DNA of 39,197 nt, taken from positions 1 through 39,197 of the forward strand of contig NIVC01000081.1 of NCBI GenBank assembly GCA_002269645.1, given 5' to 3'. The translations under genes and the position numbers were made by a program. The stretch's first letter is position 1. Each line of letters begins with the position of its first letter. This document shows positions 8,289-10,045 of this stretch, piece by piece. The notes under the pieces are model-generated. The model ran no database searches. It was given only the letters and a program-made list of their open reading frames with translations, and was not told the DNA's origin. The stretch is from Macrostomum lignano. Lineage: Eukaryota.

Positions 8289-8763
8289 ATGACTCAACCG
8301 AGTAGCAGTCAAGAAGAGCAGCAGCCTGCAGCTGCGGCGGCTTCTCATCTTCAAACGCATGCTCCTGTGTCCGCCTTCCTGCCTGGCGGCCAGTTTGCCA
8401 TGCCACTGTCTGCTTTTGTGCCTGCGGCCACTACAACTGCGCCTTGGTGCAGCGTCCAATATTACGAGTTGAAGACCAAAGTAGGCGAGAGTTATCACGC
8501 TTCTGGGCCGGAGTTCACCATCGATGGGTACACTTGTCCTCTGGCGCCCAATCGATTTTCTGTCGGCGCCCTCAGCAATGTGAACCGCTGTCGCGAGGTT
8601 GAGAGTGTCCGACGATTGATTGGCCGAGGCGTTCATATTCAACGAAACGCGGATACTGGCGAGGTTTTTCTTACCAACCTGTCTAATAGTCCGGTGTTCC
8701 TTCAGGCCCCGTGCATCAACTACGACAGCAATCCTGGGGTAGTAGTACGATTGGATGTTGGCA
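8289..8763 (+). CDS. SMAD-family protein exon 1: short low-complexity N-terminus plus first part of MH2
   Basis: WCSVQYYELKTKVGESYHAS...IDGYTCP...RFSVGALSNVNR...VRRLIGRGV matches SMAD MH2. ATG at 8289; donor GCA|GTAAGT at 8764 (phase 1). Confidence 0.93.
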
Positions 8764-9773
8764 GTAAGTTTAATTCGACTTTTCTTCTCTGAATATATTC
8801 AATATTCAATAGTATTATCAAGGACGGCTTTATTAGAAGGACGGAGATCTTCGTTTCTTAGAAAATATTTGGCAGCTGGCTCTACGGCTCTACGCTAAAA
8901 TTATGCTACGGAGACAGGAACAGTCAGACAGGCAGTTTCGCATTAGAAGCGCATCAAAATGCTCAAGAGGCATTTTTCGTTTAGGACATATGAATGTAAA
9001 TTAGAATGAGCAATATTTATTCATCTGTTTTTGTGCTGGAATAGTAAAAAGCTTTTTATCTCCATGGAGACAAGACAGCCCCTCGAAGATTTTCTAAGAA
9101 AAGAAATCTCATTATCCTACTCAAACCAATAAGTGCTGATTGAGCATGCTTTTTATGGTTTTGGAGGGCTGATTACTTGATTAATTTCAAGTATTTTAAG
9201 CCTTAAATCATTGTGTTAGTGTTTCCGTAAATTTTGTGCTCAGTTTTCTATTCAGTGGGATTTATTGAAACCGGCTCTGCACTGCTTGCAGTCTGTAGCT
9301 AAAGCAAATGCTCTCTAATGCTCTCGTAGCTGATAGCTAATGCGTCATCAGTATGCAGTCTCTCTATTAATAAACTAGCACACGTGTCTTACAAACTCTT
9401 GCGGTTTTCTTGGGCTATCCACCTCGGTTTTCTGCACCACTTTTGCCTCTCCTTGTCTGACAGCCTTCTAGCTGTTTTATATTTAACCTATTGTGACTGT
9501 GAGAACGAACTGGCCTTATTGAGCAGAGCCTGTGAAGCTTTGCTTGCTTTTTAATTTATCCGTTTTTACAGCACATATTAAGGTGATTCTAGCGATTCTT
9601 CTGAAGTGAAGTACATGTATGTCCTAGAAATTTACAATTCAATTGCCTGCGAAACAATGAGGACTGCGAATACCTTACTGCAGAGGATTCAATTATTTAA
9701 CTCAATAATTCAAGAAGATAGAGACAATAGAAAATATAGCAAATAGTTTAACCCGCCTTTCAACAATTCGCAG

Positions 9774-10045
9774 GCGACAAGCTGCTGGTTTTTTCCATGC
9801 AAAGCTTTCTTGAAAAAGTGCAACAGCTGCGCGGCCGGTGGCCCCCGCGCGAGGCCCTGAACCGCGCGCAGGCACTGTGCTCCATTCGCCTGTCCTTTGT
9901 GAAAGGCTGGGGTCATAATTACCAGCTGCAGTGTATCATGTCTACACCATGCCACTGTGAGGTCATCTTCAACGAGGCTTATCGCGAACTTGACGGCGAT
10001 CTTACTAATCCTGCTCTCGCTGACATGCCTTCATCAATGTCATAA
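9774..10045 (+). CDS. SMAD-family protein exon 2: rest of MH2 with C-terminal SSMS receptor-phosphorylation motif
   Basis: Acceptor CGCAG ending at 9773, phase 1, joins as VRLDVGS|DKLLVFSMQSF. Continues LCSIRLSFVKGWGHNYQLQCIMSTPC...SSMS* with TAA at 10043-10045. Confidence 0.94.

What the first reader, a model, noticed from the sequence alone, without database searches (positions are those of the whole stretch)
8289..10045. MH1-less R-SMAD with intact SSMS tail but non-canonical L3 loop: candidate TGF-beta decoy or adaptor
Seen: a 248-aa two-exon protein made of ~50 aa of low-complexity sequence plus MH2, ending SSMS*. I found no MH1-like sequence on the + strand between the PNGase stop (4734) and 8289, and no PPxY motif. 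The L3 loop reads GWGHNYQLQCIMSTPC. Known: R-SMAD receptor specificity is set by L3 (YRRQT in SMAD2/3, YHRQD in SMAD1/5/8). The second Arg (SMAD2 R428) is part of the phosphoserine pocket together with K375, K420 and Y426. MH1-less SMADs are rare (e.g. C. elegans DAF-14). Inference: this protein may be receptor-phosphorylated but cannot bind DNA. It has lost the pocket Arg (to Leu) and fits neither the BMP nor the activin class, so it may act as a competitive inhibitor or serve a lineage-specific receptor.
Basis: partly seen in the sequence, partly recalled or inferred. Interest (0 to 1): 0.75.

Follow-up and report, generated by a model that had tools for sequence, protein, structure and literature searches.

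The report
MH2-only SMAD with altered L3 loop
This is an intact two-exon animal gene for a very divergent TGF-beta-pathway SMAD that has only the protein-binding MH2 half and the phosphorylation tail; truncated SMADs of this kind are already known, but the changes to its normally conserved L3 loop are rare.

Summary
Exon 1 (8289-8763) and exon 2 (9774-10045) join through GTAAGT...CAG into a 248-aa protein. It has about 50 disordered residues, a full-length MH2 domain (Pfam E 1.5e-44) and the tail SSMS followed directly by a stop. No MH1 exists anywhere in the 39 kb, by tblastn or by a purpose-built MH1 profile. A minus-strand vWA gene and the PNGase gene fill the upstream space.

The protein is closest to SMAD2/3, at only 44-46% identity. 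No closer relative was found among 1.84 billion cluster representatives. It keeps 30 of the 34 most conserved MH2 columns, so it diverged under purifying selection on the fold. The strongest departures are in or next to the L3 loop: R427Q, R428L, T430C and the otherwise invariant W437H.

My best reading is a receptor-phosphorylatable R-SMAD that cannot bind DNA. It could give its phospho-tail to a partner's pocket but could not accept one. However, MH1-less R-SMADs are already known (Echinococcus EmSmadA/C, Capitella Smad1/5/8, C. elegans DAF-14), and the known ones transduce signals rather than act as decoys. Transcription, the 5' end and the source species remain unknown. Interest is moderate to low.

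The parts
8289..8763 (+). Exon 1: the start codon, about 50 aa of low-complexity N-terminus, and the first two thirds of the MH2 domain (residues 1-158 plus the first base of codon S159).
   Evidence: Translation. tblastn with SMAD3 proteins matches 8403-8774. GC is 0.547 against 0.374 in the intron.
8289..8438 (+). N-terminal 50 residues, rich in Q, A, S and P. Predicted disordered. No PPxY and no S/T-P sites. A second in-frame ATG (M38, GCCATGC) has a stronger Kozak context than ATG1 (CGCATGA).
   Evidence: AlphaFold2 pLDDT is about 55 over residues 1-50. Motif scan and ATG contexts.
8764..9773 (+). The single intron, 1010 nt, GTAAGT...TTCGCAG, phase 1 in codon S159 (aligns with Smad2 C380).
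   Evidence: The Tetranychus urticae SMAD2 gene has a phase-1 intron one codon away (the codon matching Smad2 G379), next to a 1-aa indel. The two introns are probably the same ancestral one.
9774..10045 (+). Exon 2: the rest of the MH2 domain, the L3 loop, the C-terminal tail and the stop codon.
   Evidence: Translation. tblastn match at 9773-10042. GC 0.537.
9905..9952 (+). L3 loop, GWGHNYQLQCIMSTPC (residues 203-218). Q209 matches Smad2 R427, L210 (9926-9928) matches R428, and C212 matches T430. H219 (9953-9955) follows and replaces the invariant W437.
   Evidence: Alignment to 1KHX Smad2. R428 is R in 71 of 73 diverse MH2 domains and W437 is W in 73 of 73. This is the least confident part of the fold model (pLDDT 65 for residues 201-210).
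10031..10045 (+). C-terminal SSMS (residues 245-248), the R-SMAD receptor-phosphorylation motif, followed directly by TAA.
   Evidence: The tail is identical to the Smad2 SSMS tail and sits at the same position relative to the stop.
8274..8277 (+). In-frame TAA (8274-8276), four codons before the ATG. It overlaps a possible AG acceptor (8276-8277) preceded by a T-rich stretch. Upstream out-of-frame ATGs lie within 40 nt.
   Evidence: Use of the acceptor is untested.
10539..10544 (+). First AATAAA after the stop, about 500 nt downstream. Candidate polyadenylation signal.
   Evidence: pattern match only.
6263..7174 (-). Upstream neighbour on the opposite strand: a vWA-domain gene whose start lies 1.1 kb from the SMAD start codon. 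It limits the room for 5' exons.
   Evidence: 41 homologues, best E 7e-31 at 40-45% identity over the N-terminal ~58%. Weak Pfam VWA_4 match.

Best explanation
This is a lineage-specific, highly divergent paralogue of the activin/TGF-beta class R-SMAD (SMAD2/3 type). It arose by DNA-level duplication, lost the MH1 DNA-binding domain and the regulatory linker, and kept a folded MH2 domain with the SSMS receptor-phosphorylation tail.

Proposed mechanism (inferred, not shown):
1. A type I receptor phosphorylates the tail.
2. The phospho-tail docks in the L3/beta-8 pocket of a Co-SMAD or a full-length R-SMAD.
3. The protein thereby joins SMAD oligomers as a subunit that brings no DNA-binding domain.

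Its own pocket is remodelled (R427Q, R428L, W437H). It probably cannot accept a partner's phospho-tail and so cannot form canonical homotrimers. That would make it an obligate 'tail donor' that changes the composition and DNA-binding valency of SMAD complexes. Whether the net effect on signalling is positive (as with EmSmadA/C and DAF-14) or inhibitory is open.
For: - Shown: the CDS is intact and has canonical splice sites.
- Shown: the MH2 match is full length. The AlphaFold2 model has pLDDT above 90 over most of residues 51-235. It superposes on SMAD2/3 MH2 crystal structures with target-normalised TM-scores of 0.84-0.90.
- Shown: the protein is closest to SMAD2/3. Scores against solved structures are about 139 bits for SMAD2/3, 126 for SMAD1, 102 for SMAD4 and 75 for SMAD7. 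With the L3 loop masked, the activin-class profile scores 146 bits, the BMP-class profile 110 and the Co-SMAD profile 104.
- Shown: substitutions follow family conservation. Agreement with the majority residue is 88% in columns conserved at 90% or more, then 56%, 42% and 25% in less conserved bins (Fisher p = 1e-8).
- Shown: residues I recall as trimer-interface residues (D300, R310, D450), plus K420, W422 and Y426, are kept.
- Shown: the stop falls directly after SSMS.
- Shown: exon GC is 0.54-0.55 against 0.37 in the intron, as in the neighbouring genes.
- Shown: the intron sits at or next to a conserved SMAD2/3 intron site.
- Shown: there is no MH1 in the window.
- Literature: the L3 loop of one subunit binds the phosphorylated C-terminus of its neighbour (PMC7175140). 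The R427A/R428A mutant of Smad2 loses PI(4,5)P2 selectivity but only about 2-fold of GS-peptide binding, whereas K420A loses about 10-fold (PMC8567202).
- Literature: MH1-less R-SMADs are phosphorylated and functional in Echinococcus (PMC10073696).
Against: - There is no transcript evidence of any kind, and no orthologue, so no dN/dS can be computed.
- The source organism is unknown.
- The first ATG has a weak context, and upstream ATGs precede it.
- Loss of the invariant W437 and of R428 could mean loss of function rather than a new function.
- The receptor-specificity residues match no known class, so phosphorylation by any receptor is an assumption.
- The L3 loop is the least confident part of the model.
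Confidence: 0.5

Rival explanations
1. A non-functional or unexpressed relic: a duplicated 3' fragment of a SMAD2/3-type gene that lost its 5' exons. It is either no longer used or died too recently to show disabling mutations.
For: - Only 44-46% identity to any known SMAD, and no orthologue anywhere.
- Two of the most conserved residues of the family are lost: R428, present in 71 of 73, and W437, present in 73 of 73.
- The first ATG has a weak Kozak context and upstream ATGs precede it.
- No expression data.
Against: - Both exons are open, the splice sites are canonical and the stop sits exactly after SSMS.
- 30 of the 34 most conserved columns are retained, and substitution is graded with conservation (p = 1e-8). 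This shows long divergence under selection for the fold.
- The exon/intron GC contrast is sharp.
- A neutrally decaying copy this diverged would be expected to carry stops or frameshifts.
Confidence: 0.2
2. An incomplete gene model. The MH2 exons are the 3' end of a longer gene whose 5' exons (MH1 or another domain) lie outside what was recognised and splice into the AG at 8277 or into an acceptor inside the low-complexity region.
For: - A plausible acceptor with a T-rich tract lies at 8276-8277, just after the in-frame stop.
- The first 50 residues are not conserved and could be partly untranslated.
- The window starts only 8.3 kb upstream of the gene.
Against: - No MH1-like sequence on either strand of the whole 39 kb, by tblastn or by profile HMM (best E 1.1).
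- The upstream space holds a minus-strand vWA gene with real homologues and the PNGase gene.
- Local introns are about 0.3-1 kb, so exons more than 8 kb away across two genes would be atypical.
- MH1-less R-SMADs with an ATG just before MH2 have been verified by cDNA work in Capitella (PMC7522025).
Confidence: 0.12
3. An ordinary positive signal transducer for a co-evolved, lineage-specific type I receptor. The unusual L3 residues (Q, C) match a changed receptor L45 loop. The protein then activates transcription through its MH2 domain together with a Co-SMAD, as proposed for EmSmadA/C.
For: - The SSMS tail is kept, along with K420, W422 and Y426.
- MH1-less activin-class SMADs are phosphorylated by the parasite's own receptors in Echinococcus (PMC10073696).
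- MH2-only SMADs can activate transcription (discussed in PMC7522025).
Against: - No receptor sequence is available to test co-variation.
- The loss of R428 and W437 goes beyond the two residues I recall as setting receptor specificity (Lo et al. 1998, not read here), and affects the phospho-tail pocket itself.
- This reading overlaps with the best explanation and differs mainly in the sign of the output.
Confidence: 0.18

Closest known systems
SMAD2/SMAD3 (activin/TGF-beta class R-SMADs; PDB 1KHX, 1U7F, 1DEV)
   Same: - MH2 fold (target-normalised TM-score 0.84-0.90) and the best sequence match, about 139 bits.
- SSMS tail identical to that of Smad2.
- K420, W422, Y426, D300, R310 and D450 kept.
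- Intron at or next to the conserved site near Smad2 G379/C380.
   Different: - Only 44-46% identity, whereas the animal SMAD2/3 MH2 sequences fetched here (spider, slug, annelid, rat) are nearly identical to one another.
- No MH1 and no PPxY or S/T-P linker.
- The L3 loop reads YQLQC instead of YRRQT.
- W437H, and W368 (recalled as the SARA/MAN1 contact) replaced by S.
- Two residues deleted before Y366.
Echinococcus multilocularis EmSmadA and EmSmadC
   Same: Activin-class R-SMADs that naturally lack MH1 (PMC4711336, Table 2) and carry a phosphorylatable C-terminal motif.
   Different: - They are phosphorylated by human TGF-beta type I receptor and by EmTR3/EmTR2, and are detected with anti-phospho-Smad2/3 antibodies (PMC10073696). 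This suggests canonical receptor docking.
- I did not see their L3 sequences.
- No close sequence relationship to the window protein was found.
Capitella teleta Smad1/5/8
   Same: An R-SMAD with an ATG immediately 5' of MH2 and no MH1, supported by genome, transcriptome and PCR. Its authors suggest a possible dominant-negative role (PMC7522025).
   Different: It belongs to the BMP class, whereas the window protein leans to the activin class.
C. elegans DAF-14
   Same: A SMAD with a conserved MH2 domain only (Inoue and Thomas 2000, as cited in PMC7522025).
   Different: It is a nematode dauer-pathway protein. No specific similarity was tested here, and its L3 sequence was not examined.
Inhibitory SMADs (SMAD6/7, Dad)
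   Same: They have no canonical MH1 and can compete for receptors or Co-SMAD.
   Different: - I-SMADs have no SSXS tail, whereas this protein ends in SSMS.
- SMAD7 is its weakest SMAD match (75 bits; TM-score 0.73).

Membership tests
SMAD family | MH2 domain (Pfam PF03166) with the MH2 fold | tested here: met
   E 1.5e-44 over model positions 2-174 of 174. AlphaFold2 model with Foldseek top hits on SMAD2/3 MH2, probability 1.00.
SMAD family | N-terminal MH1 DNA-binding domain (PF03165), present in canonical R-SMADs and Co-SMADs | tested here: not met
   No MH1 anywhere in the 39 kb window by tblastn or by a 69-sequence MH1 profile (best E 1.1). Exons outside the window cannot be excluded.
R-SMAD class | C-terminal SSXS receptor-phosphorylation motif at the very end of the protein | tested here: met
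   The protein ends ...PSSMS and is followed directly by TAA.
R-SMAD class | Phosphorylation of the tail by an activated type I receptor | not testable with these tools
   This needs a kinase or cell assay with the species' own receptors.
R-SMAD class | Conserved L3/beta-8 phosphoserine pocket (Smad2 K375, K420, Y426, R428) | tested here: not met
   K375 is R, K420 and Y426 are kept, and R428 is L. R occupies this column in 71 of 73 diverse MH2 domains. The residue roles come from Wu et al. 2001, recalled and not read here.
Activin/TGF-beta class R-SMAD (SMAD2/3 type) | L3 specificity residues R427 and T430 (YRRQT) | tested here: not met
   The loop reads YQLQC, with Q and C at the two positions. 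It is not the BMP-class YHRQD either.
Activin/TGF-beta class R-SMAD (SMAD2/3 type) | MH2 outside the L3 loop closer to SMAD2/3 than to the BMP class, Co-SMADs or I-SMADs | tested here: met
   Against solved structures: about 139 bits for SMAD2/3, 126 for SMAD1, 102 for SMAD4 and 75 for SMAD7. With L3 masked, the profiles score 146, 110 and 104 bits. The BMP-class profile rests on only 3 sequences, so the margin is soft.
R-SMAD class | Linker with a PPxY motif and proline-directed S/T-P phosphorylation sites | tested here: not met
   No PPxY anywhere. The only S/T-P sites are at residues 134 and 216, inside MH2.
Inhibitory SMAD | No SSXS tail, and an I-SMAD-type MH2 | tested here: not met
   The SSMS tail is present, and SMAD7 is the weakest SMAD match.
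MH1-less R-SMADs (architectural group: EmSmadA/C, Ct-Smad1/5/8, DAF-14) | The mature mRNA starts shortly upstream of MH2 and has no MH1-coding exons | tested here: inconclusive
   The genomic evidence fits: an in-frame stop 4 codons before the ATG, no MH1 in the window, and neighbouring genes upstream. No transcript data could be obtained.

The most novel reading that the evidence does not exclude
This is a natural 'pocket-dead, tail-competent' SMAD. It is an MH2-only subunit that receptors still phosphorylate. It can only donate its phospho-tail to Co-SMAD or R-SMAD partners and can never accept one. It would thereby cap or re-compose SMAD oligomers, a built-in stoichiometry regulator. It may be paired with a lineage-specific type I receptor whose L45 loop co-evolved with the YQLQC L3 loop.
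Probability: 0.25. Interest if true: 0.55.

Novelty: new member of a known kind. Interest (0 to 1): 0.35.

Why it matters
If the gene is expressed, it adds an independent case of MH1 loss in an R-SMAD. It would also be a natural experiment on the L3 loop. The SSXS tail, K420, W422, Y426 and the recalled trimer-interface residues are kept. The arginine recalled as reading the partner's phosphoserine, and an otherwise invariant tryptophan, are replaced. That separates the 'donate a tail' and 'accept a tail' roles of an MH2 domain, which have mostly been separated by engineered mutants (for example Smad2 R427A/R428A). The practical value is limited until the species, the transcripts and the partner receptors are known.

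Tried and rejected
- The vWA ORF and P0115 were not on record.
- Word-indexed search found no relative above 46% identity. Exhaustive phmmer over 1.84 billion representatives found none either. Orthologue comparison, dN/dS and a check of upstream MH1 in relatives were therefore impossible.
- Scans of viral and metagenome contigs with peptide patterns found no relative.
- Species identification failed. The PNGase core gives at best 56% identity to unnamed contigs, the vWA gene 45%, and Rfam and tRNA scans found nothing.
- Cluster look-ups for short or L3-variant SMAD hits gave almost no names.
- Lo et al. 1998 on the L3 loop is not held, so residue roles from it and from Wu et al. 2001 are cited from memory.
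- Two Pfam calls failed on stop codons. I replaced them with a local MH1 profile search.

Readings considered and rejected:
- I-SMAD: rejected because the SSMS tail is present and SMAD7 similarity is the lowest.
- Co-SMAD: rejected on a lower score and the presence of the tail.
- Retrogene origin: rejected because an intron sits at or next to an ancestral SMAD intron site.
- Chance ORF: rejected on Pfam E 1.5e-44.

Full report
**1. The observation**

Reading 8289-10045 on the + strand gives an ATG at 8289. The open frame runs to a GTAAGT donor at 8764. A 1010-nt intron ends in TTCGCAG at 9773. The second exon runs to TAA at 10043-10045.

The spliced CDS is 747 nt and encodes 248 aa ending PSSMS. 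The intron is phase 1 and splits codon S159. An in-frame TAA lies four codons before the ATG.

Pfam MH2 (PF03166) matches residues 52-225 over model positions 2-174 of 174, with E 1.5e-44. The best solved structures by sequence are the SMAD2 and SMAD3 MH2 domains, E about 1e-39.

An AlphaFold2 model built on an 87-sequence alignment has these features:
- mean pLDDT is 83.7
- values exceed 90 over most of residues 51-235
- values are about 55 over the first 50 residues
- the value is 65 for residues 201-210, which lie in the L3 loop

Foldseek places the model on the SMAD2/3 MH2 crystal structures, with target-normalised TM-scores of 0.84-0.90.

Exon GC is 0.547 and 0.537. The intron is 0.374 and the upstream spacer 0.392. 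The neighbouring PNGase exons show the same contrast. The described object is real and cannot be a chance ORF.

**2. Is MH1 really absent?**

tblastn with four SMAD2/3-type proteins (three carrying an MH1 region) against the whole window hits only the two MH2 exons. The best other match has E about 0.6.

I built a profile HMM from 69 diverse MH1 domains and searched all six-frame ORFs of 15 aa or more. It gave nothing better than E = 1.1, and nothing on the + strand upstream of the gene.

The upstream space is occupied by two genes:
- The PNGase gene ends at 4734. It carries Transglut_core, Rad4 and PAW domains.
- A vWA-domain gene runs on the minus strand at 6263-7174. It has 41 homologues, with best E 7e-31.

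Only 1.1 kb separates the vWA start from the SMAD start. Introns in this window are about 0.3-1 kb.

MH1 exons would therefore have to lie more than 8 kb away, across two other genes. That is possible but unlikely.

A candidate acceptor (AG at 8276-8277, after a T-rich tract) and several upstream ATGs exist. The true 5' end needs cDNA evidence.

**3. What kind of SMAD is it?**

Scores against solved structures are about 139 bits for SMAD2/3, 126 for SMAD1, 102 for SMAD4 and 75 for SMAD7. With the L3 loop masked, group profiles give 146 bits for the activin class, 110 for the BMP class (only 3 sequences) and 104 for Co-SMADs.

The protein is therefore an R-SMAD that leans to the SMAD2/3 class. 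It is extremely divergent:
- The word-indexed search of 5.8 billion proteins found at best 44-45% identity.
- The exhaustive phmmer search of 1.84 billion cluster representatives found 1254 hits, the best at 146 bits and at most 46% identity.
- No orthologue turned up in viral or metagenome contigs.

The source species also seems absent from the databases. Its PNGase core finds at most 56% identity. A PAW-domain PNGase and a SMAD together point to an animal (from my own knowledge of where these families occur). I could not narrow this further.

**4. Origin**

The T. urticae SMAD2 gene (locus L001) has a phase-1 intron in the codon that matches Smad2 G379, the KIPP(R)|CNLKIF junction. From memory, the human SMAD3 exon 7/8 junction (c.1009+1) is at the same place.

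The window gene's only intron is also phase 1. It lies one codon away, next to a 1-aa indel, so it is very probably the same ancestral intron.

A second mite intron, at RRHIG|GRGV, is absent here. This points to a DNA-level duplicate that later lost introns and its 5' half. It does not point to a retrocopy.

**5. Selection pattern**

I aligned the query with 73 diverse MH2 domains. Its agreement with the majority residue depends on how conserved the column is:

| Column conservation | Columns where the query agrees |
|---|---|
| 90% or more | 30 of 34 (88%) |
| 70-90% | 56% |
| 50-70% | 42% |
| below 50% | 25% |

The difference between the top bin and the rest gives Fisher p = 1e-8. The divergence therefore accumulated under purifying selection for the MH2 fold. 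Recent inactivation cannot be excluded.

The query departs from columns conserved at 85% or more at only six sites, in Smad2 numbering:
- L313V
- L408A
- R428L (R in 71 of 73)
- W437H (W in 73 of 73)
- L442F
- L446Y

From the alignment to Smad2, further changes are R427Q, T430C, V431I, T432M, K375R and W368S. There is also a two-residue deletion before Y366.

The following residues are kept:
- D300, R310 and D450, which I recall as trimer-interface residues
- K420, W422 and Y426
- the SSMS tail

The changes are therefore concentrated in and around the L3 loop.

Loss of the L3 arginine is rare but not unique. Three of the L3 loops listed from the hits also lack it. One of them is a bdelloid rotifer SMAD that reads YAQSD.

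**6. Mechanism (inferred)**

Established knowledge provides three points:
- The L3 loop, together with the receptor L45 loop, sets R-SMAD/receptor specificity.
- After phosphorylation of the SXS motif, the phospho-tail of one subunit binds the L3 region of SMAD4 or of another R-SMAD to build trimers (PMC7175140).
- From memory, the specificity residues are R427/T430 (Lo et al. 1998), and the phosphoserine pocket is K375, K420, Y426 and R428 (Wu et al. 2001).

Quantitative work on Smad2 adds detail (PMC8567202):

| Smad2 mutant | PI(4,5)P2 affinity | Binding to phosphorylated GS peptide |
|---|---|---|
| R427A/R428A | 3-5-fold lower, selectivity lost | about 2-fold lower |
| K420A | about 20% lower | about 10-fold lower |

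The window protein keeps K420, W422, Y426 and the tail, and lacks both arginines. My best reading has three parts:
- It can still be a receptor substrate and can still insert its phospho-tail into a partner's intact pocket.
- It cannot accept a tail itself, so it is unlikely to homotrimerise and would depend on Co-SMAD or full-length R-SMAD partners.
- It brings no DNA-binding domain and no linker regulation (no PPxY, no S/T-P sites).

It would therefore alter the composition and DNA-binding valency of SMAD complexes. The sign of the effect is open.

The known MH1-less R-SMADs are signal transducers:
- EmSmadA and EmSmadC are phosphorylated by EmTR3/EmTR2 (PMC10073696; MH1 loss noted in PMC4711336).
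- DAF-14 has only an MH2 domain (cited in PMC7522025).
- Capitella Smad1/5/8 lacks MH1, and its authors raised a dominant-negative possibility (PMC7522025).

**7. Rivals**

- An unexpressed or recently dead relic: confidence about 0.2.
- An incomplete model with unseen 5' exons: about 0.12.
- A plain positive transducer for a co-evolved receptor: about 0.18. This overlaps with the best explanation.

None of these can be settled without transcripts, orthologues or biochemistry.

**8. Verdict**

The protein is a new, very divergent member of a known kind, the MH1-less R-SMADs, with an unusual L3 loop and phospho-tail pocket.

Interest is moderate to low at 0.35. The architecture has precedents, function is unproven, and the species is unknown. 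The separation of tail-donor and tail-acceptor features is a neat, testable idea.

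Noticed in passing
window 31-1080: A 1 kb (TCTA)n microsatellite of about 264 copies at 90% matches. It lies directly upstream of the PNGase start, with extreme GC skew of -0.95.
   Followed up: no
window 1300-4734 (+): A PNGase gene with a Transglut_core/Rad4 core (1300-1953). 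PAW-domain matches fall in two separate ORFs: 2486-3247 (E 1.2e-44, nearly full length) and 3545-4120 (E 3.4e-9, partial). This suggests a duplicated or split PAW module. No PUB domain was seen between the microsatellite and the start. The best database identity is only 56%.
   Followed up: partly
window 6263-7174 (-): A single-exon vWA-domain ORF. Its only named relatives are bacterial (Ktedonobacteraceae MAGs); the other hits are unnamed environmental or Logan sequences. Similarity covers only the N-terminal ~58% of the ORF. It could be a horizontally acquired gene, a poorly annotated eukaryotic family, or an ORF longer than the real CDS.
   Followed up: partly
window 24696-25413, 26746-27295, 38557-39068: Three minisatellite arrays with 21-22 bp units (34, 27 and 23 copies). 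They create long artificial ORFs on both strands.
   Followed up: no
window 28930-29887 (-): An RRM_1 exon (29615-29887, E 2.5e-13) lies upstream, on the minus strand, of an RGG/glycine-rich ORF (28930-29397). The pair looks like an eIF4H/eIF4B-like or other RGG RNA-binding protein gene.
   Followed up: partly
window 36852-37412 (+): An ORF with a QRICH1-domain match just under Pfam's cut-off (29.9 bits against 30.8). I recall this domain from transposon-derived genes.
   Followed up: no
window ~23650-24110 and ~34170-34550: ORF translations from these two regions share near-identical peptide stretches (for example ...GPRTEQDGPG...). TRF also reports similar 20-21 bp units at 23724 and 34247. 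Together these suggest a dispersed repeat or transposon fragment.
   Followed up: no
window 8250-8305 (+): Two upstream ATGs lie within 40 nt of the SMAD start codon. One opens a short ORF (MLRFATHDSTE*) that overlaps the main ATG. Trans-splicing or splicing at the AG at 8277 would remove them.
   Followed up: no
protein P0186 (Didymodactylos carnosus, bdelloid rotifer), also P0217 and P0243: A few other database SMADs also lack the L3 pocket arginine: YAQSD in P0186 (a 404-aa protein that also carries the MH1 motif C.NP.H), YRDQS in P0217 and FRIQE in P0243. Loss of this residue has therefore happened more than once.
   Followed up: partly
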